Assembly (NCBI GenBank): GCA_026770705.1
Contig: JANJGN010000546.1
Location: 62,001-126,000 of the forward strand
Source of the DNA: Isurus oxyrinchus
Lineage: Eukaryota
Direction of reading: 5' to 3'
Length of the DNA stretch: 64,000 bases
Shown piece after piece: positions 13,493 through 63,925 of this stretch. Under the pieces are notes generated by a model. It did no database searches. It was given only the letters and a program-made list of their open reading frames with translations, and was not told where the DNA came from. How positions within the stretch are numbered: the stretch's first letter is position 1; each line of letters opens with the position of its first letter. A program made the position numbers and the translations under genes.

Positions 13493-13789
13493 CTTGCACA
13501 GTTAGTACGAGGGTCCGCTCCGATGAAACAGATGGATATCTCACTCTGCAGCTGAGAGTGTGTCCGTGGTGTTTGAGTGATGGGATCAGGGTCAGAACAG
13601 AAGTATAGGTCAGAGTGACACCATGCTGAGTTACAGTGTTTGAGACTGATCCAGGTACGTCAGTGGGAGTGTCCCAGGTTAAGACAGGTGCTGCTGTTCC
13701 ATTGCACGTTGTGTTGAAGGTGCAGCTTACATCCACACGCTTTCCTGCAATAATTTCAGCAGGGAATATCGTGGGTTTATCAGTGAAAT
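13493..13789 (-). CDS. Gene B second C2-set Ig exon (297 nt, phase 1-1)
   Basis: FTDKPTIFPAEIIAGKRVDVSCTFNTTCNG...LSCRVRYP...LTVQ with TTAG acceptor and GTAAGT donor. Confidence 0.9.
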
Positions 13790-30712: not shown

Positions 30713-30719
30713 GAATTAT

Positions 30720-30950
30720 TGGAATCTGTCTTTATAAAGTCACAACATCAACAAAGGACGGTGTTGGTGGTGGAAGTGAATTCCAATCGTTCCGTTACTT
30801 ACCCAGGACCTGTCCGACTGCTCGCCTGGGGAGGAACTGCCCACACGCTCTGCTTGGGCTGAATGACCTCTTCCTGTGCCGCTCCCTCTGTGTATTTAAT
30901 GAGAAAGGATGGATGTGTCACTTTGAGACAAAGTGGGAGGTGTTTGCTGT
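30720..30950 (-). promoter_or_regulatory. Orphan exon 1/promoter copy with no downstream leader exon
   Basis: Near-identical to about 24052-24260 and 37050-37258; donor at 30803/30802; runs into satellite. Confidence 0.7.
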
Positions 30951-31019
30951 CAAAGTATGAAAGCAAACTGTTAACCCTTGGAGTGCCAAGGCTGTGTCCG
31001 AATGTGATTAAACTTTTTC

Positions 31020-31810
31020 CCATGTAACAGGCTCGAGGGGCTGAATGGCCTCCTCCTGTTCCTGTGTAATGGGATTGAGGGGGCTGAATGGGCCCCTCAT
31101 GTTCATGTGTAACAGGCTCAAGGGGTTGAACGGCCTCCTCCTTTTCTTTTCTTACAAGCTCGAGAGGCTGAATGGGCCTCCTCCTGTTCCTGTGTCATAG
31201 GCTCGATGGGCTGAATGGGCCTCCTCCTGTTCCTCTGTCACAGGCTCGATGGGCTGAATGGGCCTCCTCCTGTTCCTGTGTCACAGGCTTGAGGGGGCTG
31301 AATGGTCCTCTTCCTGTTCCTGTGTAACAGGCTCGAGGGGGCTGAATGGGCCTCCTCCTGTTCCTGTGTAACAGGCTCGAGGGGGCTGAGTGGGCCTCCT
31401 CCTGTTCCTGTGTAACAGGCTCGAGGGGGCTGAGTGGGCCTCCTCCTGTTGCTGTGTAACAGGCTCAAGGGGCTGAATGGGCCTCCTCCTGTTCCTGTGT
31501 AACAGGCTCAAAGGGCTGAATGGCCTCCTCCTTTCTTCTGTGTAACAGACTCGAGGCGGCTGAATGGGCCTCCTCCTGTTCCTGTGTAACAGGCTCGAGG
31601 GGGCTGAATGGCCCTCCTCCTGTTACTGTGTAACCGGCTCGAGGGGGCTGAATGGGCCTCCTCCTGTTCCTGTGTAACAGGCTCGAGGAGCTGAATGGGC
31701 CTCCTCCTGTTCCTGTGTAACAGGCTCGAGGAGCTGAATGGGCCTCCTCCTGTTGCTGTGTAACAGGCTCGAGGGGCTGAATGGGGCCTCCTCCTTTCTT
31801 CTGTGTAAAT
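31020..31810. repeat. ~42-43-bp minisatellite (TGTAACAGGCTCGAGGGGCTGAATGGGCCTCCTCCTGTTCCTG) resembling the CR1/SINE 3' tail
   Basis: Tandem units; same motif at 61570-61760 and similar to the CR1 end near 11610-11630. Confidence 0.9.
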
Positions 31811-32886
31811 GGCCAGTCCAAAGGATGTGTTTGATGCTGGGGTTAATGGCCTCCAACACAATCCTGTCCTCACATGATTAACTTAGTTAGTGACTGGTTA
31901 CTGGTTAATGCAGGAGGACTATTTATTTTCCCAATCTTTTATCCATGTGTCTGGTTAGGATCTTTTCATCAAACACAGAGCAGAACCAGGATCGAGGATG
32001 TTGGTGTCTGAAATCTGTAACACATCGCACAGTCCGCCCATTCACTCAGCCTTCAGGATGGAGGCTAATTGTTCTTTCAAAAACTGAAAGACTGAAATGG
32101 TTGTAAGTTGTAGCTTTAGCTCATTCTGTTGTCCAAGCTGTTTCAGCCATCCAGGATACAGTGAAAAACGTACATTTGCAAGCAACTTTTCACATCATAG
32201 CTCCCTCTGTTCACAATGACATTGGCAACATCAATGTAAACATGTCACGCTGTAATGACATCCTCCCACCAGTGCTGGCACTGTAGCACACCTGTTTTCC
32301 TCTGTGTTGTCGGAAGTCTACCAATTCTCCAATCAAATTGTTTCCCTTTCCCAGGCTGCGATTAGTTTAATATTAAACAATAACTCATAAAATACACATG
32401 TTCTCTGAACATATGTTTGACTGCAAAATGGTGAATAAATTGTAGGGATCTGCTCTGGTCCAATTATCCACTGATCCTGCATTTCCTGAAGTCTACACTG
32501 GCTGATGAATATTCTGTAAACACTGACAGACAGGAAGGTGAATAACAGAATGAAAATTAACTCATAATCACGGACACGGGATTGAATTTGTCCGTTCTGT
32601 CCTGGTACATCATCGAACGATATCTAAAGACATTTACAATCAGAATGGAGAGAAGGATGTTTCCAACAGGGAGGGACAATTCTGAAGGAGGATGTTCGAA
32701 TTGAAACCCACAGACAATCATCCTGGATAGATCATTCCGAAGAAATTCCATCAGATTGTAACAAGAGGTTTAAATCTATTTCCTGGGAGTGAGTTCCTGT
32801 GGATATTAGGAAGGTAAATTGGAGTTTTGAATGATTCTCCCATTCTGTATTCTCCCCACACTGTGTGTGTCTCATTCTTGCTCAGT

Positions 32887-33003
32887 TTATAAATTCCCAT
32901 AAACAGAATCCTTGGCAAATTCACAGTTTGCGTAAAGATCATCATCTGTATCAGGACTGACTCCGCGGTTAGATTTCATTTCCAGATCCTTCTCATCTTT
33001 CTT
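32887..33003 (-). CDS. Orphan terminal cytoplasmic exon KKDEKDLEMKSNRGVSPDTDDDLYANCEFAKDSVYGNL*
   Basis: TCTGTTTCTATTACAG acceptor, phase 0, 39 codons including TAA, two Tyr motifs. AATAAA on minus at 31922-31927. Confidence 0.7.
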   Translation of the reverse strand, partial: KKDEKDLEMKSNRGVSPDTDDDLYANCEFAKDSVYGNL

Positions 33004-33119
33004 CTGTAATAGAAACAGAAATGATCAGAGTGACAATCAGAGTGATCAGTGTTTAGTATTATTGATCCAAATCAAAAATTCCACCCACAATACATACATT
33101 AATTATTGATACTATTGGA

Positions 33120-36100
33120 TGCTGGTCACGAGTTTGTTGGGACTTATGGATCCAGGCTTGTTTTGGAGAGGCTGAGTAGGTACAATAGACAGAGTAGATC
33201 AGCAGACAGTTCTTAGATGAAACACATTCTGCTTATTTACAAAGGAACTCAGCAGCTACACTTGTGTGCTTTCAACTCAAGCCCTGTCTCCGCATTACAG
33301 GCTCTAACTAAAGGTGACCGACTACTGAGGTACCTGCGCCACTCGGCTGTTGGACACGGATATAAGAGTTAAACAGGGACTTCTATTAGTGAAAACCAAA
33401 GGTCAGCAGAATTCTCCAGGTGAACCTTGTGCACCATGGGGCTGACATCAGCAGAACTCTCCAGAAAGGCCTTGAAGATCACGAGGGATTAACTCGAGAA
33501 GAGACATAAAGAGATGCTGAGGGTAAACAGATAAGGTAAAGGCAAACAGCACCAGGCTAGAACGAGATAAACAGCTCTTGCTTGGGTAAGGAGCAGATAT
33601 GTACCTGGGACTGGGAACATATGCTTATTATGTGATTATGTACTGACAAGATTTGAATTTAAATAACCCAATGTGTACGTGACTAACTCTGTGAACAAAA
33701 AAGATGGTTTCCCTGTAATGGGTAGAGTTCTGTTTTTAGCCAGGCCTGAGGTTGATTCTGAGAACACACCACAACACTGAGCTCATGTTATCTTCCATTG
33801 TAACCTTCTTCTTAAAGGTATATCACACATCAGATTACCACCACCCTCCCCCTTTACTCAGAAATACATTTTACACTTACTTTTACCATTTTCTCAAAGT
33901 ATCAAATGATTTACACAGATCAGTAATTTACAAATTCAGTCTTTCTGGGGGGTTTCCTTATGCGTCTGGAACGTCTCAGATCCACAGCTTCAGATGCTTT
34001 GTCAGGAGTCTCCTTTTCTGATGTTGTCCCAACACCAGCTTCTTCGGTGGACACCTGCAAACCTGTTTCCTCAACTCTTGCAGGTACAACGGACCCTTCA
34101 GACACATCTGTTCTCAGCTGAGTTCTTTCAACAGGAGACATAGACGCAGCCGTGAAGACTGGTGGGAATGTTTCTTGGTACTTTGTTTCTCTCCTCCTTA
34201 TATGACCCACATGTCTCCATATGACTCGGTCTTCCACTTTCACATGGTGAGAAAGAGTTCCAATCGCTGCATTTATTTCACCCGGTGACCACTTTGGCCC
34301 CTCTCTAAAATCCTTCACATATACCGTCTCTCCTACGGTCAGCTTCCTGTCATGACTATGCCAGTCATGTCCAGTTTCCTGTCTTCCTGGACTCCTTTCC
34401 ACCTTCCCGCTGACATTTAGCATGACTGATGTTGCAAATGTGACGTGAGAAAAAACTTTTTCACACAACTAAGTTTTGGGCCTGGATTGCACGGCCTGGA
34501 AGTGTTGTGGAGGCAGGTTCAATCGAGGCATTCAGGAGGGCATTAGATGGTTATTTGGATAGAGAAAAGGTGCAGGGGCATGGGGAAAGGCAGGGCAATG
34601 ACACTAGGTCATGATGCTCATTTGGAGAGCTGGGATAGACACGATGGGCTGAATGGCCTCCTGCTGTGCCATTAAGACTCTGTGATCCTGCAGAGGAGAC
34701 TCTGAAAGGCAAACCGGTTTATTGATACAACCCTTTGTGTGTATTAATTGTGACAAACTTCTGGGAGGCCTTCTCGAACTCCAATTGTTGATAAGCATGG
34801 CTCATATCAGCTCCGTGTAGGCCGTTCCAGTCAATTCTTGTCATCTCCACAAACACTTTGGCCAGGCTCAGGTCCAGGGACTATTGGTGCTGCCCATTCT
34901 GAGGACTGCACAGATTGTATCACTCCCAGTTTCTAGAACCTGCCCAATTCAGCATCTGCCTTTTCCCACATTGCATAAGGTACTGGCCGTGCCTTCATAA
35001 ATCAGAGGGGTAGAGTCTGGATCCACATGAATTTTTGCTTGCAGCCCCTGGATCTCCCCGAGTTCATCTTGGAAAACTGAGATGTATTTTTGTAGTAGCT
35101 CAGGTTGCCCACTGGCTCTCAGTTGGAAGATCTCAGACCAATCCAGTTTAATATCTTTCAGCCAGTTTCGTCCAAGGAGGCTTGGTCCCTCACCAGCTCC
35201 CATCATCAAGGGTCATTTTACTGATTGACTTCCATACTGTATAACAACCCTGCTTATGTCTTTGGCTTGAATGTCTTCTCCCGTGTGAGTTTTCAATTAG
35301 TCATCTGTTTCTTCCAAATTTAATTGACTTTCCCCATGATTCCAGTATTTGAAAGTATGCTCACCAATTAGCGTAATGTTAGCTCCTGTGTCCACCCCCA
35401 TTCTGAGAGCTCTATCATTCACCCTCACTGTTACATAGATTGGCTCTGTTCTTCCTACCTTTAAATTATACAATGAATAACTATCTGAATCTGTTACTTC
35501 AGGCTCTTCTATGTTATGGATCTCACAGGGTTTTCTCTCTTGATTGAAACTCTGCCTGATTCTATCCTTGCAATCTCTCATGGGCTCTCTGTTTCGATGA
35601 CAGTAAAAACAATTGATTTTTTTAAAGTTCCATTCACTACGAGGTTGTCTGCTTCACCTCTGTTCACATTATTCCATGTTTTCTCTGCTAAGTCATTCCT
35701 TTTTATTTGCTGCTAGTGGTGGACGTTTCCCGTTTCTCATCAGAGCTGTACATTTTCCCGCACTTCTTGGCTGAGGCTCCTCACCCAACATGAGGACGGT
35801 GACATTTTGCACTCTCCATATGTTTTTCGAGTCCCTCACTGCTCTTTCCATAGCCAGCACTATTCCCAGAGCTTTCTGAATATCCAAATCTGTTTCAGAC
35901 AGTAATCTCTTCTGAATCGAATCTTCATTTATACTGCACACCAGTTGATCTCTCAGCATATCATTTATAGATTTACCAAACTCACAATGTCCTGTTAACT
36001 GTTTCAGACTTTCCACATAACATGCAGCTGCCTCCCCTGGGACTCTATTTCTTGAGTTAAATTTGGACCGTTGCATCGTTACCGAGGGCTGGGGCTGGGA

Positions 36101-36490
36101 AGGAATCTTCACAAGGTTTACTATATCATCTAAACTTTTTGAATCCATGGCACCGGGTGGCATTAAAGTTCGCATCAATCCCTAAATCTTACTGCCACAC
36201 GTGGATAAGAGGGTCGCTCGCCTCTTCTCCTCCCCATCAATGTCATTCACTTGGAAAAAGAACGCGAGGAGTTCACCATAATGGGACCAATCGCCCACCG
36301 TTGGGTCGAAAGGATCAACTCTTCCAAACTGCAGCATTCTTCGAGGGGACTGCTTCGGTTATTAGGATGGAAATTATATTTATAATCACTGCGTGAGGCA
36401 CAGCCCGATTTCAGTTCCCTTGCTCTCATTCCTTGATTTTTCTTCCTTGTTTTTCACCTCATCACCAGTTTATTCAACCCTTGTCACTAC
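33120..36490 (-). mobile_element. Ty3/Gypsy LTR retrotransposon (gag, protease, partial pol; probable 3' LTR)
   Basis: Gag QRSKFNSR..DMLRDQLVC, protease VDTGA, LLGRNWL, integrase C-terminus VYVKDFREGPKW, PPT near 33840-33860, PBS-like TGGTGATGAG near 36460. Confidence 0.85.
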
Positions 36491-37035
36491 TTTAGTTTGC
36501 ACTCCCTCGGTACTGAGCCTGCGACAGTGCAGCATTCCCTGGGTACGGACCCTCCGACTGTGCAGTGGTCCCTTAGTCATGAGCCCCTGATAGTGCAGCA
36601 GCCCCTAGGTACTGATGCTCGAAAAGTGTAGCGCTCCCTCAGCATTGACCATCTGACAGTGCAGCACTCCTTCAGCACTGGCACACCCAGAGTGCAACAC
36701 TCGCAGTACAGACCCTCCGACAGTGCAGCACTAAGTCAGTGCTGACCGTCCAACAGTGCAACACTCCCTCAGTACTGACTCTCCGACTGTGCAGGACACT
36801 CAGTCCTGACACCGAGTGCTGGTCTGGTTTGCCAGCCTGAATTTTGCCAAATGAATTTCGAACTGACGACCTACTCACTCAGAGAGAGAGAGGGTTCGAA
36901 ATCCAGTGTCCCACAGGAGAATTCCTGGTCAATGACTTTCCGCTTTTGAGCAGAAATATCATCACAAGTCCAGAACGCAAAGGGTTAACAGCTTCAAAAA
37001 ACTCAAAACACGAGCTGTTCTGTCACTTTGATGCA

Positions 37036-37175
37036 ACTTCCTCATTTTGTCTCACAGTGACACATCAACCCTTTCTCATTAAATACACAGAGGGAGCAGC
37101 ACAGGAAGAGGTCATTCAGCCCAAGCAGAGCGTGTGGGCAGTTCCTCCCCAGGCGAGCAGTCGGACAGGTCCTGG
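37036..37175 (+). promoter_or_regulatory. Gene C putative promoter and exon 1
   Basis: ACTTCCTCATTTT PU.1-type motif 37036-37048, TTAAATA 37079-37085, CCTGG|GTAAGT donor. Confidence 0.6.
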
Positions 37176-37583
37176 GTAAGTAACGGAACGATTGGAATTC
37201 ACTTCCACCGCCAACACCGTCCTTTGTTGATGTTGTGACTTTATAAAGACAGATTCCAATGATTGATGCCTTTGAAAGATTTCTACTGATTCTTGAGATC
37301 TGGGTGTGAGGCTCAAGTCTGTTGTACAGAACATCTTTCTAGCTCAAGGGATGATGGAAGTGCAGGGACATGAGCTTTGGGACATCCTGAGGTGGTGAAA
37401 GGTGCTATAGAAATGCAAGTCCTTCATTGATTTATTTTTTTAAAGCTTTTTAACTCTCTGCAGAGCACCTGTCATCCCACAGAGAACCAAATTAGTCTGT
37501 GTAGACATTATGTAAAAGGAGTTCTGATCTCTCGAGAGCTGTCGGACAAGAGGTGAGGTCTCATTAACTCCTTTCTCTTTCAG

Positions 37584-37665
37584 AGTTTGAGAGTCAGAAG
37601 CTAAAGGAATATCTGGGAGTGGACAATAATTGGGAAATATTACTGCCTCCTGTCACTTCTCCAAG
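37584..37665 (+). pseudogene. Gene C leader exon with start codon mutated from ATG to ATA (37626-37628)
   Basis: GGACA-ATA-ATT-GGG-AAA against GGACA-ATG-ATC-GGG-AAA in A and B; in-frame TAA upstream in the same exon. Confidence 0.85.
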
Positions 37666-38530
37666 GTAATATCATCGTCAGCTCAGACAGATTTATGGTT
37701 AATAGTCTTCGTAAAAGATCATTCTTATTGAGCTGTGATTCGGAACCAATTCAGCAGTGACCCAGTGCACAAACTCACACCAACTCCCATTCACCCATCA
37801 CCCCTGTGCTCCCTGATATACACTGACTCCCTGTCTGACAGCAGAATTGGGGGAGTGCAGAGATCACAGATGGTTGTAGGTTTGAGTAGGTTACAGAGAC
37901 AGGGAGTGGAGCGGAGTGATGGAGGGATTGGAAATCAAGTGTGAAAATAATCACATCGAGGTGTTGTTGGACTGGGAGCCAGTGTAGGTCAGCGAGTGAC
38001 TTGTGGGGTCGGGGTGGGTGTGTGCGGAGGTGAAAGCTTGAGTGGAAAATTGGACACAAAATTCAGGGGATGAAGTCTATCTTGTGGCTAGCACTCTGAC
38101 AGCAATGGCCTGAAATTAGTGTCTTTTGCTGATTTTAATCAGAATTTCCCATGAAGACAACACAGCAGCTCCTAGAATAGACAGGCTGTTCAGTGTCACA
38201 CTTCCTGTCCATTCTCACCATGCTAGATACTTCAGTAAGGGAGCAAGATAACTGAAAGAGAGAAGGAAGGTAAAGCTGTCTGTGTGTAAAGGTGTCAATA
38301 TTCAGTTTGCATATTTGTCTTTGCTCTTGACACAGGCAGAGCTCAAGCTAGAGGCACTGTGTTAGTGTGTTTCACAGGGTCTGCTGGAGTAGGGTCAGTG
38401 CTGAGCTTGGGGACAAGTCAGTCTACAATGCTGCATCGGAATCAACAATACAACAATATGGGGTTTGGATCAGAAATAATCCCTTAGACAATGAGGATCC
38501 AGGGTTAAATATTGATATTTCTCTCCACAG

Positions 38531-38899
38531 TTGGACTGTCACAAGAGTGGAAAGGTGAAACTCCACGAGAGGTGACAGCGCAGGAAGGTTCGTGTGTACA
38601 GATTCCATGTCATTACAGTTATCCATCGTGTCTGGAAAACCAACCGCGAGGTGGAGTCTGGTTTAATAATGAGGAACAGATTCCCTGGGCTCCCATTGCC
38701 TTTCACTCCAAGGATCACAGTCACGAGTTACCACGGTTCCACCATCGGACCCGGCTGTCTGGAGACCTGAAAGATGGCGACTGTTCCCTGATTATAAACA
38801 ACATCAGACGGGAAGATGCAGGACCTTATTTTTTCAGAATAGAATTTGACAATGGTCCGAGCCATAACTATTACCCTGTAACCCAGCTTCACGTTTCTG
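38531..38899 (+). CDS. Gene C V-set Ig exon (open frame; GPYFFRIE)
   Basis: CCACAG acceptor, G|GTAAGT donor, 369 nt, close to the gene B V exon. Confidence 0.88.
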
Positions 38900-40214
38900 G
38901 TAAGTGCTGTGTTATAATTACTCAACAATTCACATTCAACACTCAATGGGAAATAACACAAACTGTGACATTTACATATTAACACAAAACACAGCTTATT
39001 ATAACAGACTGTCTGATTCTCAATAACCTGGTGATAGCTTCCAGTTCAGTCCTTAAGCAACCTCTAATACTCACTTTAATATCAATGATTAAATGTATTG
39101 ACTGTGTCCATCAATGCTATCAGGTTATCCACTCCCATTAGTCTCCCTAATGCTTTTTAAAAGTCTAACAATTTGACAAAAGAAGGATGTGCATTCCTAT
39201 TGCGCCTTACACCACCTCAGCAAACTTCAAATCACTTCACAGACAATGAAGAAATTCTTGAAGTATAGTCACTGTCTAACGTGGCAGTGAGTTTGTGCAC
39301 AGGAAGATCCCATAGAGAGCAATGGGATCACTGACCCAGATCTCTGAGAGAATGATGAGCCAGGGTTCCATGAGCTGTGGGCTGCTCCATCACCCACACC
39401 CCAGTGTTGGCAATTCAAGGGTCTGGGAGTGAAAGTGTATTCAGCTCAGTGACACATTCCCCACCAAGTTTGAAAATAGGAAAGTTGCTGCTGATTGTTG
39501 TTACCTCTCAGTTCCCATCTCATCCTTGGAAACCTGCTTTCAAAATACAAAAGCAAGTCTCGCATTTCCATAGCGCCTTTCACCACTTCAGGACGATACT
39601 AAATCAATTCACAGTCAATGAAGTGATTCTTGAAGCACACATTCTCCCCACTCTCTGGGTAAAGAAGTTTCTCCTGAATTCCCCATTGGATTTATTAGTG
39701 AGGATGTTATATTGTCAGCCTCTGGTTTTGTTCATTGTGAGGAGTGGAAACACTCTCCCCATGTCTACTCGATCAAAACCTTTCATTACTTCAAAGGTCA
39801 AATGAGGTCACCCCTCAACCTTCTCTGTTCAAGAGAACAGAGACCCAGCCTGTTCATCCTCTCCTGATAGGTAAAGCCTCACATTGCTGAGATCATCCTT
39901 GTGAAGCTTTTTACCACCCTCTCCAGTGTCTCCATATCCTTTTCCAAATGCTGAGTCTGTTCTCCCCGAGCTGTGAGCTGTTCCTCCACCCTCACCCAGT
40001 CTGGTCAAATCAAGGGTCACTGAGTGAGCGTGTATTAATCTGAGTGACAGAGATTCAACAAGTGTAAAAATAGACAATTCTTTAATGATCATTGTAACCT
40101 CTCAGTTCTGATATCATCCTTGTAAAAGTGCTTTCTCTTGTGGGACTGTGATTTCTATTTGAAATGATGCTTCACGTTATATTTCTCTAAAAGGATCCAT
40201 TCTCTGTCTGTTAG

Positions 40215-43505: not shown

Positions 43506-43787
43506 ACGCACCACGGAATCTCTCAATTACTTCTCCAGATATGATTAACGCTTCATCAATCAGTATAATTGAGTGGAATTCTGCAGTGATAATCTGCTCT
43601 GTCTAGAGCTCCCCAGCTTTTAACCTGATGTGGCGACATCTTAATGTCCCAATGAACAGAACAAGTTCCAACAATGAGCTGTGGTTGGTGATTCCTCACG
43701 TTACATCCAGGGATACTGGAGACTATCAGTGTGTGGCAGAGAATGAACATGGAGCAGTGGAGGGATTCATAACCATCACTGTGGAAT
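43506..43787 (+). pseudogene. Gene C third Ig exon with in-frame TAG (43604-43606)
   Basis: (Y)APRNLSITS...IICSV*SSPAFNLMW...DTGDYQCVAENEHG...TITVE with TTTAG acceptor and GTGAGT donor. Confidence 0.9.
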
Positions 43788-45492
43788 GTGAGTTACACAG
43801 ACTTTAATATTTCTCTCATCTCCGAACACATATACTCAGATGCTCTCCCACGCACACACACACACAAGCACTCACAAATGTACAAACCCTAAGTGCATGC
43901 ACACACACAATCCCACACTCATGAGCACACAGAAAGACACACTCACACACAAACACAGTAGTACACACTTCCCTGTGAGTTACCTGACCTCCCTCAGTAC
44001 TGCACTGGAGAGTTCTCCTGGATTCTGGGATATGTGTTCCCATTCATATTTATCGAAGAATATCCAAATTACAAAGTCTATTCCAGAAACTCACATGCAC
44101 AAAGATTCCAACAGATACTCCCCACTTCTCCGTGTCTCTCTCTCCTCCTTTAAGAAGCTTCCTAATCCCGAACTCTTGCCTGCCCTAACTCCTCCTTATC
44201 ATGCCCTGTGTCAAATTTTTTGTGTATCTGAGAGAAAGGGAGAGATAAGGAAGTTTAGGAAGGGATTTCCTGTTAGTGAAGAGCTTACTTCTTTTTCTCA
44301 CCTTTCCAGTGTTCAGTTTTGCCATCATGTCCAATGACCCTGTTTATAATGGGGGCATCCTATGTAAACGTCACACTGTCTTTACATCCTCCCACCAGTG
44401 GTGGCACTGTGGTGCTTAAGCTTGCACCTCCCAGCTTTTCAGCCAACTTCACTTCACAATTTGCTACACATGCTGTAAGGTCATCAAAATTAACATATAT
44501 CAAATGGTAGATTTGATAATACAGTTTATTGAAAGGTTCATCCGCGCTCTGGGAAGGGTTTACACTCTCCAGGAAGCAAAAATAGGCTGGATGTTGGAGA
44601 GTTCATCTTTTCCCAGAGAGTAGGGATCCTCGGGAATGTGCTGTCAGTGGGTGTGGTGGTTGCTGTCTCTCTGTTGCCTTCAAGAGGGATCTGGAGTGGT
44701 TACTAACTGGGGGAGAGATCATGGAAGCGGAGAATGGTACAGCACAGGAGGAGGCCATTCAGCCCATTGAGCCTGTGCCAGGTCTTTCAATGTTCTATCC
44801 AATCAGATCCACTAACCACCACACCACTTTGCCCCCATCTTCTTCCTTCAAGTGTTTATCCAATTTCCCTTTTGAAAGTTCCTATTGAATCTGCTTCCAC
44901 TGCCCTTTCAGGCAGCACCTTCCAGATCACAACAACTCGCTCTGTCAAAACAAATTCTCCTCATCTCCCCCTCCGGTTCGTCAATCTGTGTCCCTCTGGT
45001 TACCGACCCTCCTGCCCCTTAAATACATCGATACTGTTCACCTCAACCACTCCCTGTGGGAGCGAGTTCCACATTCTCCCCTTTCTCTGGGTAAAGATTG
45101 GAACTGTTTATTAAGTGGGGCGTGTAAGTCCGTGGGGGAGTCCATCTCGATCCTGCCCGATTCGCACACGCGTCCGAGATGGATTTCCACCCTGCACTAA
45201 ACGTTTCCAGAATTTTCTACAGCACAATCCTGTACACAGCGATGGAGAGAAACATTGGACAGGGAGTCCAACAGCACAATAATCCATTCTCACCAATGTT
45301 CCACGCTAAGGGGAAAGTTCCGATTGTCCACTCTTAGAGTGTTTACAATGAAAACATTCATTCCACATTGAATCCCAGTGGATGGGTCAATATTACAGCA
45401 AATGTTGCAATGATATGAAGCTTGATTGTTCAGCCAGAGTGAGAGATTGAAAGCGGAGAGTCAGTGATGATTTCTTTCTGTGTGTTCTCTAG

Positions 45493-45677
45493 ACAGTGGA
45501 GGAGAGATTCTGCATGTGATCCTGATCCTGGGAATACGAGCTGTGATATTCCTTGTGGCTGTGGTTATCACTATCTTCTGGAGTCTGTGTCTGGGAGAGA
45601 CAAACAGTGAAAGGAAGTCGACAGACTGTTTGAAGCTTTGTACAGCAACAATCTGGTCAGTCAGTGTGGACAAATAA
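45493..45677 (+). CDS. Gene C transmembrane/terminal exon with TM Arg and a frameshifted tail (..VITIFWSLCLGETNSERKSTDCLKLCTATIWSVSVDK*)
   Basis: Inverted paralog of 11759-11898 with a 1-nt indel after the TM. Confidence 0.8.
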
Positions 45678-53195: not shown

Positions 53196-53312
53196 CTAAT
53201 ATCTACAGCAGAGACCACAAGTCTCATTTGGTTCTCTCCAATTACAGCAGTGACAGCAGAATCTGCAGAGCTGCTGTCTGCTCATTCTCTTCTGGCGCTG
53301 CAGCAAGGAGCC
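53196..53312 (-). CDS. HAMP: Hepcidin-like gene exon 3: GSLLQRQKR|MSRQQLCRFCCHCCNWREPNETCGLCCRY*
   Basis: CTGCTTTTCCAG acceptor, phase 0, RQKR furin site, C-x2-CC-x-CC-x8-C-x2-CC eight-cysteine hepcidin pattern. Confidence 0.9.
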   Translation of the reverse strand, partial: GSLLQRQKRMSRQQLCRFCCHCCNWREPNETCGLCCRY

Positions 53313-53419
53313 CTGGAAAAGCAGGAGCACAATAGGTGAGAACATTCCGGAAAGAAAGAAGGCACCGCCTCCCTTTGACTCTGGCATCATTTCAATCAGG
53401 CACGTCATTGGAAGGAGGA

Positions 53420-61180: not shown

Positions 61181-61764
61181 ATCTCTTGAAGGGTTCTCAA
61201 AATTTCCAACTGTCAAGGAACCCTGGGTTGGTGAGCGTGACCCCTGACCTCTCCTAGTGCAATTTAGTTAGGGTTTGGGGGTGGGACAAGGGTAAGGGCA
61301 TTAGTAGCGTGATTCTCCCTCGTTATGCCGTGTGTTCCCCATTCTTAACTCAGTGTACTTTCTAAGTCTGTATAATCTCAGTGTCATCCTAATGTTAGAA
61401 GTTCATTTGTGACTTCAGTAAACTCAGTTTTTGTCTTGCACCAAAACCAGTTGTCTGCTGCACTTTGTGACAAGCCCCGAATAAGTCCAAGGTCTAGAAC
61501 CCAGGGAGTGGGAGCGATTCAGACGGCTCAGAAGTCGCAGGTGAAGCTGACACACACCACCACACCCTACAAGGGGCTGAATGGCCTCCTCCTGTTCCTG
61601 TGTAACGGGCATCAGTGGCTGAATGGCCTCCTCCTGTTCCTGTATAACGGACATAAGTGGCAGAATGGCCTCCTCTTGTTCCTGTGTAACGGACATAAGT
61701 GGCAGAATGGCCTCCTCCTGTTCCTGTGTAACAGGCTCAAGGGGCTGAATGGCCTCCTTCTGCA

Positions 61765-63130
61765 CTGTAAACTTGTTGTGATACTGTAACTGCCTCTTTG
61801 GTTTCATTCAGCTGAATCTTCAGCTCTTCAGTCTCTTCCTTGTATCTCTTGCCTTCCTCCTGGAACATTGGACATGGTTGGGTCTTCCCTGCCAACTGTT
61901 TCTTCAGTTTGCTCAGAGCGGCACAGAATTCGCTTTCTTTCTCTTCAGGATTTTCCAGTGGAACCAACTCTGACCTGAGGGACACTTGCAGCCTGTGAGG
62001 ATGCTTCAATTCTTCAAACTCATTCCGAGATACACTCTCATATTCCCCCAGCAACTCAGCAACTCCTCCAGTGAAACATTTCAGAGCAGCTGAGCTTGGT
62101 TTTCTGGAACCAGTCTCGGCCCAGAAGACTAGGGCCCTCACCTGTCGCTATGATCACTGGAAGCTGGGCTGTCTGCTGCCTGTAGGACACAGGTACTGGG
62201 ATGAGGTCCTTTCCCTGTATGGATTCTCCAGTGTGTGTCTTCAGCTGATCCATTGTTGGCTCTAAATTCAGCGTCTGGGTTCCTTCATTTAGCTGTTTAA
62301 ATGTGGGCTCTTCCACCACTGTGTCTGAGGCTCCCGTATCTGCCCCATTACTAGTGGCTGCCCATTCACTTGGGTTGTGATGGTTATAGGTTCAGTTTTT
62401 ACCACTGTGACATTGGACAGGGAATAGACATCGGTATCAGCAGCTTCAGGCTCTGTGATATTATTCACTTCCATCATGTTGGTGCACTGCCTGATGGGCT
62501 GTCTCGATTTCACCCTGCATTGCTTTATTACCTGCCCCTTTCTTGTGGCAGTGATGGCATTCTGCCCCCTTGAACCTGCAGGTGTCCAGTACGTGCTCAA
62601 TGCCCCCCACATCGAGAACAGGCCAACTTCGGAGTTGCTGCTGAAATACTCCCACGAAGCCTTTTAGTTTCTGGAGCGGCAGAGACTGTCTCTCGCTTGG
62701 CGGCTGTCTCTCTCTCTCTCTCTCCAGTTTGAGCCTCACGCCCGGTGGTTGGTTCCTGTCCCAGCTGAGGACTGGCGCCATGTTGTACATCCTGTAAATC
62801 CCGCCAGTCTCTCCCAGCACTTTCCATGCCTGGCGCTATTTCCATAGTGCGCTTCAAATCGATGTCGGCTTCTGCGAGTAAACGGCTCTGAATGGCGTTG
62901 GGGTGAACGACACAAACCAATCGGCCCCGCAACATGTCATTGAGTGTGTCTCCGAGGTCCCAGTGCTCAGTCACCTGCTTCCACTTCATTGTATAGGTTG
63001 CGATGGACTCTCCCTGGGCCCTTACTCTGGAGTTAAACTTAAACCTCTGCATTATTACCCACGGCTTCAGCTGAAAATACATCTTCATGAGGTCGACTAA
63101 TTGGTGAAAAGATTTAGAATTGGGTGCAAT
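61765..63130 (-). mobile_element. Ty3/Gypsy gag-protease remnant
   Basis: IMQRFKFNSRVR, DMLRGRLVC, CSRCGGH knuckle, GEGPSLLGRDW; same family as 33120-36490. Confidence 0.85.
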
Positions 63131-63415
63131 ACACGTCACTGTCTTCAGCTCTGAGACTGTCAATCCTCACCGAACAATTCTTCCCTTCCAAGTCGCCGAT
63201 TATTTTAGCACGTCCCACGAATGTGGCCATCCCATAATTGGGATCTTTGGTGTATGTGACGGTATATTTCCATCTATACCAATATTTATACCAAGCTCCG
63301 TGCAGTGCTGTGTAAGAGTGGGAAGGAAAGTCAAAGCTACACGGAATAACCACACAAGAGCTGCTGATGGCCCTCAGAGGCAGCGCCTTCATAGACCATC
63401 CCTCTGACGTCACTC
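63130..63415 (-). pseudogene. Gene D: MAG/Siglec-like V-set exon truncated at the F strand
   Basis: TTTCAG acceptor, then SCVVIPCSFDFP..HGAWY..FVGRAKIIGDLEGKNCSVRI..DSDVY, then direct fusion to gag sequence and TAA at 63114-63116. Confidence 0.82.
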
Positions 63416-63479
63416 CTGAAAGGCAACAAGGGAAGAGACAGGACATCAAAAAGCAGAATATTACTTCAATGGAGAGAGG

Positions 63480-63925
63480 CAGCAGAATGCGGTACAGAGG
63501 GATCTGGGTGTCCTTGTACATGAATCACAGAAAGTCAGCATTCAGGAACAGCACGGAATGATGAAGGCAAGTGGAATGTTGGCCTTTATTGCAAAAGGAT
63601 GGAGTATAAAAGGAGGGAAGTCTTGCAACAGCTGCACAGGGCGTTGGTGAGATTGTATCAGGAGCAGTGTGTACAGTTCTGGTCTCCTTACTTAGGGAGG
63701 GATAGACTCTGCATTGGAGGCAGCTCAGAGGAGGATCACTGGGCTGATTCCCGGGATGAAGGGGGTTTGTCTTATGAGGAAATGTTGAGCAGGTTGGGCC
63801 CTGTATCCATTGGAGTTTAGAAGAATGAGAGGTGATCTTATTGAAACATATAAGATTCTGAGGTGGTGGGGGGTTTGACAGGGTGGATGCTGAGGGGATG
63901 TTACCCCTTGTGGGGGAATCCTGTG
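63480..63925 (+). mobile_element. CR1 LINE 3' ORF2 fragment
   Basis: MEYKRREVLQQLHRALVR..CVQFWSPYL. Confidence 0.85.

What the first reader, a model, noticed from the sequence alone, without database searches (positions are those of the whole stretch)
32887..33003. Orphan ITIM-bearing tail exon suggests a paired activating/inhibitory receptor system
Seen: a clean acceptor then 38 codons ending DDLYANC..DSVYGNL*. SVYGNL fits the ITIM consensus (S/I/V/L)xYxx(I/L/V), and both Tyr are YxN (Grb2-type). I found no matching TM exon upstream; a Gypsy element and the inverted gene C lie there. Inference: it is the tail of an inhibitory partner, either severed by rearrangement or spliced from far upstream across gene C and hepcidin.
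Basis: partly seen in the sequence, partly recalled or inferred. Interest (0 to 1): 0.8.

Follow-up and report, generated by a model that had tools for sequence, protein, structure and literature searches.

The report
Stranded tyrosine-tail exon of shark Siglec
This is a real copy of the last coding exon of a long-tailed shark Siglec immune receptor, but here it sits cut off from the rest of any such gene, and its two tyrosines look more like adaptor docking sites than a classic inhibitory motif.

Summary
On the minus strand a good acceptor at 33003 opens 38 codons, KKDEKDLEMKSNRGVSPDTDDDLYANCEFAKDSVYGNL, then a stop.

It is not chance. The same tail ends Siglec-like proteins of sharks and rays: 12 blastp hits among 96 stored proteins, best 76% to a Cetorhinus model.

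A near-identical exon is transcribed and spliced at this acceptor in 4 of 4 runs laid. The upstream partner read from one of those runs is absent from the window.

The window holds no uncharged membrane exon and no penultimate tail exon. The exon lies in a 5.5-kb single-copy island between 222-bp inverted repeats. No run shows the window's own letter at 32913, which gives Lys where homologues are acidic.

Most likely it is a stranded copy, and the RNA comes from a twin elsewhere.

The ITIM reading is weak. The -2 residue fits ITIM in only 7 of 14 homologues. Asn at +2 and Cys at +3 of the first tyrosine are kept, so it is a dual YxN tail with ITAM spacing that is not an ITAM.

The scan noted the same tail on other pieces of this genome (s1-871256, s1-868856, s1-863554).

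The parts
32887..33003 (-). Terminal coding exon: 38 codons plus TAA, KKDEKDLEMKSNRGVSPDTDDDLYANCEFAKDSVYGNL*
   Evidence: Homologous to the C-termini of Siglec-like proteins. RNA-like contigs cover it in 4 of 4 runs.
33004..33024 (-). Splice acceptor with pyrimidine-rich tract (tcatttctgtttctattacag)
   Evidence: Contigs of X5, X6 and X7 and a loose end of X1 leave the window at 33006/33007. Depth falls from 67-560 to 4-24.
32400..32886 (-). 3' untranslated part, covered by RNA-like contigs down to the edge of the laid stretch. ATTAAA at 32371-32366 and AATAAA near 31927-31922 lie further on (read).
   Evidence: tables 2 and 8. The contigs depart from the window's letters at about 32467 (X1) and 32448 (X7).
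30714..30942 (-). Left arm of a 222-bp inverted repeat. It holds a copy of the juxtamembrane exon (30895-30803, RGSGTGRGHSAQAERVGSSSPGEQSDRSW), which lies downstream of the tail exon, the wrong order for splicing.
37043..37264 (+). Right arm of the inverted repeat (96.8% to the left arm). Its juxtamembrane-exon copy at 37091-37175 is on the opposite strand and is spliced to gene C's leader exon.
   Evidence: Joint 37174 to 37583 in X5 and X6.
33920..36178 (-). Remains of a retroelement (gag-like, protease-like and integrase-tail-like ORFs) in what would be the last intron
   Evidence: Sub-threshold aspartyl-protease hits only. Single copy in the window apart from a gag-like relative at 62597-63163.
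31017..31808 (.). Minisatellite between the 3' untranslated part and the left repeat arm
   Evidence: self matches; a related array lies at 61570-61762.

Best explanation
Shown: the stretch is a genuine copy of the conserved last coding exon of the long-tailed class of elasmobranch CD33-like Siglec receptors. In annotated relatives the order is V, C2, sometimes a third Ig domain, an uncharged membrane anchor (WKAGLL...FIFKC), a juxtamembrane exon (STGRGHSAQAERVG...), sometimes a YENC exon, and then this exon, which ends the protein.

Shown: in this window the exon is stranded. It lies in a 5.5-kb single-copy island, with retroelement remains, between two 222-bp inverted repeats. An inverted activating-type gene lies upstream and a satellite downstream. 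No uncharged anchor or YENC exon is anywhere in the 64 kb.

Inferred: the abundant spliced RNA with a roughly 99% identical exon comes from a twin copy on another locus or haplotype. This copy is a leftover of rearrangement that has begun to drift (Lys at a position that is otherwise acidic).

Inferred mechanism of the tail where it is in use: after phosphorylation, its two tyrosines, (D/N)(L/I)Y-x-N-C and (V/I/L/M)Y-x-N-(V/I/L) at the very C-terminus, dock SH2 proteins that need Asn at +2 (Grb2 type). In some copies the last motif may also dock SHP-type phosphatases. This would give the receptor a signalling end of its own, beside paired relatives that use a membrane arginine.
For: Homology. 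E 5.8e-5 against 1.84 billion proteins, to the C-terminus of a Scyliorhinus torazame membrane protein; 12 Siglec-like proteins of 96 stored match the tail, best P0022 (Cetorhinus) with 29 of 38 identical, at residues 426-463 of 463; the motif is in 14 of 96, and in 13 of those 14 at the exact C-terminus.

Pairing; gene C's V is 84.5% and its C2 95% identical to P0022.

Splicing; 4 of 4 runs show exon-level depth that collapses at 33000, and contigs that go on for 59 to 451 further letters not found on 33008-38399.

Stranding; the one upstream end I could read, X1's 30 letters and their peptide, is not in the window; no uncharged anchor and no penultimate exon; four juxtamembrane-exon copies, three downstream of the tail on its strand and one upstream on the other strand. 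The island 30942-36499 is flanked by inverted repeats.

Drift and another source of the RNA. table 3: at 32913 all four runs read C where the window has T, so codon 31 is AAG (Lys) here and GAG (Glu) in the RNA; that position is D or E in 12 of 14 homologues and never K. X1 and X7 share 3' UTR letters that differ from the window beyond about 32467/32448 (loose ends, aligned by eye).

Motif. Asn at +2 of both tyrosines and Cys at +3 of the first are kept. The ITIM -2 residue is not.
Against: The exon shows no decay beyond one substitution: ORF, acceptor, both tyrosine motifs and the stop position are intact.

The X1 contigs differ from the window at only 4 places in about 460 letters (records 1 and 2). 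That could be allelic variation in a polymorphic immune cluster, so this very copy may be the transcribed one.

Contigs drop rare variants. They also cannot be assigned to one of several near-identical copies, and I laid them at 90% likeness.

I could not see the sequence beyond 64000. Earlier notes of this scan, unchecked, place Siglec tail cassettes 18 kb beyond the end, and V exons 30 kb beyond it.

SH2 binding is inferred from motifs alone. In CD22 a Grb2 site takes part in inhibition together with SHIP (passages of PMC13299070), so 'YxN' does not exclude an inhibitory role.
Confidence: 0.5

Rival explanations
1. The exon is in use here. It is the true 3' end of a minus-strand Siglec gene whose other exons lie beyond the window's right edge. 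They would be joined through an intron of more than 31 kb that contains the inverted gene C, the hepcidin gene and a lone V exon.
For: The exon is intact. RNA-like contigs at about 99% identity are spliced exactly at its acceptor. No other copy of the exon exists in the window. Earlier unchecked notes place tail cassettes and V exons 18-30 kb beyond the end.
Against: The window's own letter at 32913 is seen in 0 of 4 runs. The 3' UTR of the contigs departs from the window. Such a transcript would have to run through the polyadenylation site of a same-strand hepcidin gene. Notes of this scan report the same tail on other pieces, so other sources of the RNA exist.
Confidence: 0.25
2. Assembly or haplotype artefact. 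In the real chromosome, or in the other haplotype, the exon sits directly behind its gene. The island between the inverted repeats and the 4.7-kb satellite was misplaced, inverted or collapsed in this assembly.
For: The exon is flanked by 222-bp inverted repeats at 96.8% identity and by a long satellite (25.9-30.7 kb), which are classic sites of misassembly and of inversion. The same orphan exon is noted on another piece (unchecked), which could be an alternative haplotig.
Against: Flipping the island does not bring any upstream partner exon into line. The window holds no uncharged anchor on either strand. The window has no N runs.
Confidence: 0.15
3. The tail is a true inhibitory ITIM tail. 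SVYGNL recruits SHP-1/SHP-2 and damps signals from the Arg-anchored partners.
For: SVYGNL fits the ITIM consensus. Of 14 homologues, 7 have S or V at -2, and all have a hydrophobic residue at +3. The pairing with Arg-anchored relatives of near-identical ectodomain is the usual setting of inhibitory partners. In CD22 a Grb2 site works within an inhibitory complex (passages of PMC13299070).
Against: The -2 residue is A or P in 7 of 14 homologues, while Asn at +2 is kept. The family has other members with a canonical LLYA(T/N)I motif, which are the more obvious inhibitory partners. No residue follows +3.
Confidence: 0.3
4. A chance open reading frame behind a chance AG.
For: None beyond its short length.
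Against: Homologues across sharks and rays carry it at the C-terminus. There is spliced RNA coverage.
Confidence: 0.01

Closest known systems
Long-tailed CD33-like Siglec models of sharks and rays in public automatic annotation. Examples: Cetorhinus maximus 'sialic acid-binding Ig-like lectin 13 isoform X3' (P0022), Mustelus asterias (P0039), Carcharodon carcharias 'CD33-like' (P0032).
   Same: The same terminal exon: 76%, 63-65% (63% in the alignment, 65% in the blastp) and 53% identity. It ends the protein at the same residue, with the same Y-x-N-C ... Y-x-N-(V/I/L) pattern.
   Different: In those models the exon follows an uncharged anchor and a juxtamembrane exon. Here neither precedes it. 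The window has Lys where 12 of 14 homologues have Asp or Glu.
Mammalian CD33-related Siglec tails (a membrane-proximal ITIM and a distal ITIM-like motif; motif details recalled, not from a call)
   Same: A tyrosine tail behind a Siglec V-set plus C2 ectodomain. It is paired with Arg-anchored relatives.
   Different: No L-x-Y-x-x-L type ITIM. The two tyrosines are only 11 residues apart, both have Asn at +2, and the second lies at the extreme C-terminus.
CD22 (Siglec-2) Grb2 site
   Same: A Siglec tail tyrosine that binds Grb2. Passages of the review PMC13299070 say Y807 binds Grb2 and SHIP. That this site has Asn at +2 is recalled, not from a call.
   Different: CD22 has seven Ig domains and further ITIMs that bind SHP-1. 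No sequence homology of the tails was tested, because I had no CD22 tail sequence from a tool.
ITAM (YxxL/I-x6-8-YxxL/I) of DAP12, FcR gamma and CD79 (consensus recalled)
   Same: The spacing fits: seven residues between the motifs in sharks and six in rays. An acidic run precedes the first tyrosine.
   Different: The first motif has Cys, not Leu or Ile, at +3 in 14 of 14 homologues and in the window. It is therefore not an ITAM by definition.
YxN docking sites of LAT and Shc for Grb2/Gads (recalled, not from a call)
   Same: Y-(V/E/A/G)-N-(V/I/L), as in the last four residues here.
   Different: Those are adaptor proteins, not lectin receptors.

Membership tests
Terminal exon of long-tailed elasmobranch CD33-like Siglecs | Sequence homology to the C-terminal 38 residues of annotated family members | tested here: met
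   12 of 96 stored proteins match, best 76% (P0022). E 5.8e-5 against 1.84 billion proteins.
Terminal exon of long-tailed elasmobranch CD33-like Siglecs | The stop follows directly after Y-x-N-(V/I/L) | tested here: met
   13 of 14 motif-bearing homologues end there.
Terminal exon of long-tailed elasmobranch CD33-like Siglecs | Preceded in the same gene by an uncharged membrane exon and a juxtamembrane exon | tested here: not met
   no uncharged anchor in the window; the four juxtamembrane copies are in the wrong order or on the wrong strand.
Terminal exon of long-tailed elasmobranch CD33-like Siglecs | Transcribed and spliced at its acceptor | tested here: inconclusive
   4 of 4 runs hold a spliced, near-identical exon. 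The window's own letter at 32913 is in none, and the runs are only guessed to be RNA.
ITIM tail | (S/I/V/L)-x-Y-x-x-(I/V/L) | tested here: met
   SVYGNL.
ITIM tail | Motif kept among homologues | tested here: not met
   the -2 residue is S in 6, V in 1, A in 4 and P in 3 of 14.
ITIM tail | Binds SHP-1, SHP-2 or SHIP when phosphorylated | not testable with these tools
   Needs a binding assay.
ITAM | YxxL/I-x6-8-YxxL/I | tested here: not met
   The spacing fits (7), but the first motif is YANC. Cys is at +3 in 14 of 14 homologues.
Grb2-type YxN docking site | Asn at +2 of the tyrosine, kept among homologues | tested here: met
   Window: YAN and YGN. Among the 12 blastp-defined homologues, 11 of 12 keep it at the first tyrosine (P0032 has YKS) and 12 of 12 at the second. 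The set of 14 was picked with Asn at +2 of the second tyrosine, and Asn or Ser at +2 of the first, written into the pattern, so it is circular for this point.
Grb2-type YxN docking site | Binding of Grb2-family SH2 domains | not testable with these tools
   Needs a binding assay.
Siglec (the cluster around the exon) | V-set domain of Siglec type | tested here: met
   the best PDB sequence matches are Siglec-5, -7, -8, MAG and sialoadhesin; the motif YFFRIEF lies in V exon 38512-38982; that its Arg is the residue which binds sialic acid is recalled, not tested.

The most novel reading that the evidence does not exclude
The C-terminal module (D/N)(L/I)Y-x-N-C-x6/7-(V/I/L/M)Y-x-N-(V/I/L)-COOH is a third signalling end of Siglec-type receptors. 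It is kept since before sharks and rays split, and it is neither ITIM nor ITAM. It would let one ectodomain family signal in three ways: a membrane arginine, a canonical ITIM, or dual YxN. In this locus it might even be reached by splicing across more than 31 kb that holds a hepcidin gene and an inverted receptor gene.
Probability: 0.25. Interest if true: 0.55.

Novelty: new member of a known kind. Interest (0 to 1): 0.35.

Why it matters
The finding shows that shark Siglec clusters hold paired receptors with near-identical lectin heads and different signalling ends. One of those ends is an old, conserved dual-YxN tail, and I found no paper on it.

For this locus the main lesson is one of caution. 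Exons of these genes are scattered by duplication, inversion and retroelement insertion. A clean exon with good RNA support may therefore still be a stranded copy, and RNA contigs cannot be assigned among near-identical copies.

If the tail proves to bind Grb2-type adaptors and not phosphatases, the simple activating/inhibitory picture of paired Siglecs would need a third category in cartilaginous fish.

Tried and rejected
Paralogous tail in the window. blastn of 31901-33900 and tblastn of the peptide against the window found only the exon itself. The 50-bp matches at 44362 and 12463 have no open frame and are a short repeat.

Membrane exon nearby. Of the minus-strand ORFs of 22 residues or more in 33004-38500, 2 passed the hydrophobicity cut, and neither was convincing.

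Catshark homologue as a probe. tblastn with P0002 hit only the tail exon. P0002's first 45 residues match a repeat, so that model's start is not real.

Upstream partner exon. No match by pattern search with up to 3 mismatches, by blastn-short (best 11 letters), by tblastn with its three reading frames, or by motif scans for HYKDI, QENGQ or a Y..(I/L/V/M)...Q exon end before GT. This also rules out this window's hepcidin exons and juxtamembrane copies as the partner.

3' loose end of X7. It is not elsewhere in the window. By eye it is a diverged version of the window's own 3' UTR, not a splice.

Protein searches. The search for homologous proteins with P0002 residues 45-158 found only P0002 itself, because of the length limit. 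I then went up by length: the V exon gave a 270-residue hit, which gave 92 hits. P0001 is a repetitive, unrelated protein.

Retroelement typing. Pfam gave nothing for the tail and only sub-threshold protease hits for the retroelement ORFs. PDB gave nothing.

Literature. 'Siglec, shark, ITIM' (35 papers, 15 listed), 'Siglec, cartilaginous fish' (22, 12 listed) and 'Siglecs, elasmobranch' (2) gave no paper on elasmobranch Siglec tails. I saw listings and the starts of abstracts only. Of PMC13299070 I read passages found with 'Grb2', 'ITIM' and 'shark'. Supplements were not consulted.

The findings index gave nothing by sequence.

Inversion idea. Flipping the island between the inverted repeats does not restore a colinear gene, so I dropped it as a rescue.

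Exons were searched one at a time.

Full report
**What is there.** On the minus strand a pyrimidine-rich tract and CAG (33024-33004) precede an open frame from 33003. It reads KKDEKDLEMKSNRGVSPDTDDDLYANCEFAKDSVYGNL and stops at 32889-32887. Both tyrosines have Asn at +2, and the last six residues fit the ITIM consensus. The 2 kb around the exon has no second copy in the window at DNA or peptide level. The window has no N runs.

**The neighbourhood.** The window is a cluster of Siglec-like genes.
- V-set exons lie at 2499-2047, 15488-15025, 22125-21658 and 63521-63117 on the minus strand, and at 38512-38979 on the plus strand.
- C2 exons lie at 13736, 20825 and 40268.
- A membrane exon with an arginine and a short tail lies at 11900-11757 (minus), with a 98% twin at about 45491-45635 (plus).
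- The V exons match Siglec-5, -7, -8, CD33, MAG and sialoadhesin among solved structures.
- A hepcidin-like ORF lies at 53196-53408 on the minus strand.

Gene C (38.5-45.7 kb, plus strand) is therefore complete in type, inverted relative to the tail exon, and of the Arg-anchored, short-tailed kind.

**The exon is not chance.** phmmer against 1.84 billion representative proteins gave two hits. One is an unrelated repeat protein. The other is P0002 (E 5.8e-5, 54% identity over residues 2-38), and the match is its own C-terminus. P0002 is a 'hypothetical protein' of Scyliorhinus torazame with a membrane segment and a cytoplasmic tail.

The word-based protein search only sees proteins of similar length. 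I therefore stepped up through natural proteins. Gene C's V exon found 12 proteins, best a 270-residue Carcharodon 'CD33-like' protein at 94%. That protein found 92 Siglec-like proteins of sharks and rays.

blastp of the tail against all 96 stored proteins gave 12 Siglec-like hits:
- Cetorhinus P0022: 29 of 38 identical, residues 426-463 of 463.
- Two Mustelus proteins, the catshark protein, and Carcharodon P0032.
- Stegostoma, Hemiscyllium, Chiloscyllium, Heptranchias, Leucoraja, Mobula and Rhinoraja.

A pattern for the two motifs is in 14 of 96 proteins, and in 13 of those 14 at the exact C-terminus. P0022's ectodomain is 84.5% (V) and 95% (C2) identical to gene C's exons. The Arg-anchored proteins share the same ectodomain. 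At family level, then, these are paired receptors with different membrane and tail ends.

**How the tail is built in relatives.** In P0022 the order after the last Ig domain is as follows:
- an uncharged anchor (WKAGLLAAGICLSVGLSGFFIFKCV);
- a juxtamembrane exon (RKWSSTGRGHSAQAERVGSS...SW);
- an exon with VYENC that ends in Q;
- this exon.

In P0032, P0039, P0035 and P0038 the juxtamembrane part runs straight into this exon.

**What the window holds of that build.** tblastn with those tails and with P0021 found four copies of the juxtamembrane exon: 30895-30803, 24226-24134 and 7306-7214 on the minus strand, and 37091-37175 on the plus strand. It found no uncharged anchor and no VYENC exon.

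The three minus-strand copies lie downstream of the tail exon. The plus-strand copy lies upstream but on the other strand, where it is spliced to gene C's leader exon at 37583-37665 (joint in X5 and X6; sequence).

Self-comparison shows the layout. The stretch 36499-38501 is the same unit as 24814-22825 (87%) and, over 37036-38327, as 7353-6083 (88%). Two 222-bp arms, 30714-30935 and 37264-37043 (96.8%), are inverted repeats. The 5.5 kb between them is single-copy. It holds a minisatellite, the exon's 3' UTR, the exon, part of an intron, and gag-, protease- and integrase-tail-like ORFs.

The retroelement label rests on those ORFs and on sub-threshold Pfam protease hits for 1 of 4 ORFs. I could not confirm 'Gypsy'.

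**RNA.** No run is on record as RNA. 13 small runs guessed to be RNA hold 22-46% of the sampled words of 32700-33300, about what the exonic half would give.

I laid four of them, from four studies and two organism labels, on 32400-38399 at 90% likeness. Depth across X1/X5/X6/X7 was:
- 32800-32999: 560/238/67/175.
- 33000-33199: 24/5/4/8.
- 33400-33599: 0-2.6.

Contigs leave the window at 33006 or 33007 and run on into letters that lie nowhere on the stretch. These are X5 records 11 and 12 (431 and 114 more letters), X6 record 19 (451) and X7 record 26 (59). X1 has a loose end of 255 or more letters. That is the signature of splicing at the predicted acceptor.

Read by eye, the 30 upstream letters of X1 continue the frame as ...PHYKDIQENGQ before KKDEKD. 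This is another tyrosine-bearing cytoplasmic exon ending in Q, as in the relatives. Those letters are not in the window. Nor is their peptide in any frame. The partner exon read from X1 is therefore further than 31 kb away on this strand, or on other DNA.

**Is this copy the one transcribed?**

Against:
- At 32913 all four runs read C where the window has T, and the window's letter has zero depth in each. That turns codon 31 from AAG (Lys) into GAG (Glu).
- The position is Asp or Glu in 12 of 14 homologues, Gln in 2, and never Lys.
- X1, the closest run, also differs at 32491, 32564 and 32914.
- X5 carries two different contigs over the first 76 letters of the exon (5 and 2 differences), so more than one copy is expressed.
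- Beyond 32467 (X1) and 32448 (X7) the two runs share letters that differ from the window at 8-9 of 30 places, plus an 8-letter gap in X1. This is my alignment by eye of the loose ends. It looks like the edge of a conversion or duplication tract, not scattered alleles.
- At gene C's leader, all four runs read G at 37628 where the window has A, giving ATG in the RNA and ATA in the window. The contigs therefore clearly include paralogues.

For:
- The exon is intact.
- X1 differs at only about 1% of letters.
- Contigs hide rare variants.

Earlier notes of this scan, unchecked by me, report the same tail on other pieces of this genome. One is an orphan exon of the same length, and another is an intact YENC/YANC/SVYGNL set. 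They also report Siglec tail cassettes 18 kb beyond this window's end and V exons 30 kb beyond it.

I weigh the readings as follows: stranded copy 0.5, in use through a very long intron 0.25, assembly or haplotype artefact 0.15.

**What the tail does.** The alignment of the window with 14 homologues keeps these features:
- (D/N)(L/I) before the first tyrosine in 12 of 14 homologues (NT in P0039, CI in P0010).
- Asn at +2 of the first tyrosine in 13 of 14 homologues (P0032 has Ser).
- Cys at +3 of the first tyrosine in all.
- Seven residues to the second motif in sharks, six in rays.
- A hydrophobic residue at -1 of the second tyrosine.
- Asn at +2 and V/I/L at +3 of the second tyrosine, followed by the end of the protein.

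Asn at +2 of the second tyrosine, and Asn or Ser at +2 of the first, were written into the pattern that picked the 14. In the 12 found by blastp alone, Asn at +2 holds for 11 and 12 of 12.

The ITIM-defining -2 residue is S in 6, V in 1, A in 4 and P in 3. The spacing fits an ITAM, but Cys at +3 fails the definition.

The conserved feature is thus a double YxN, the motif that Grb2-type SH2 domains need (recalled knowledge). In CD22 a Grb2-binding tyrosine acts with SHIP in an inhibitory complex (passages of PMC13299070), so the sign of the signal cannot be read from the motif. Other members of the same family carry LLYA(T/N)I, a canonical ITIM. They are the more obvious inhibitory partners of the Arg-anchored forms.

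**Verdict.** 'ITIM-bearing inhibitory partner' is only partly supported. The exon is one more copy of a tail class that public annotation already shows in many sharks and rays. It is stranded here by rearrangement, or at best reached over more than 31 kb.

I found no paper on this tail class in three searches.

Noticed in passing
window 37626-37628 (+), leader exon 37583-37665: Gene C's leader exon reads ATA where homologues start with Met (MIGKSYF...). All four laid runs read G at 37628 (ATG). Gene C may lack its start codon, or the RNA comes from paralogues.
   Followed up: partly
window 37091-37175 (+), 24226-24134 (-), 7306-7214 (-), 30895-30803 (-): Copies of the long-tail genes' juxtamembrane exon sit upstream of the leader exon of three activating-type genes, gene C among them; the copy at 30895-30803 has no leader exon after it. 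X5 and X6 contigs splice 37174 to 37583. A Cetorhinus model (P0021, isoform X4) reads anchor, this exon, its copy in another frame, the leader, and then a V exon out of frame, so it is probably a read-through artefact.
   Followed up: partly
window 43577-43786 (+) and 13169-13020 (-): A third Ig-domain exon (…DTGDYQCVAENEHGAVEGFITITVE), as in three-domain relatives. The plus-strand copy has an in-frame stop, so it looks like a dead exon inside the two-domain activating genes.
   Followed up: no
window 36400-36799: Summed contig depth is extreme in two runs (up to 448,581 in X7 and 134,406 in X6), with many small joints. This stretch is a copy of the 33-bp satellite that fills 25.9-30.7 kb, so the satellite appears to be heavily transcribed or very abundant in those libraries.
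   Followed up: no
window 63117-63521 (-): A lone, distant Siglec-type V exon, about 30% identical to the others. Its best solved-structure matches are sialoadhesin and MAG. A gag-like retroelement ORF (62597-63163) abuts it, and no C2 or membrane exon follows it in the window.
   Followed up: partly
window 31017-31808 and 61570-61762: A minisatellite with a roughly 43-88-bp register (self matches at 85-88%) is present at two places, once just downstream of the tail exon's 3' UTR.
   Followed up: no
P0028 (Mustelus asterias, 437 aa), residues 291-328: This is the one homologue where the tail is internal. The model reads on past YGNV for 109 residues of low-complexity sequence, probably an annotation read-through.
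   Followed up: no
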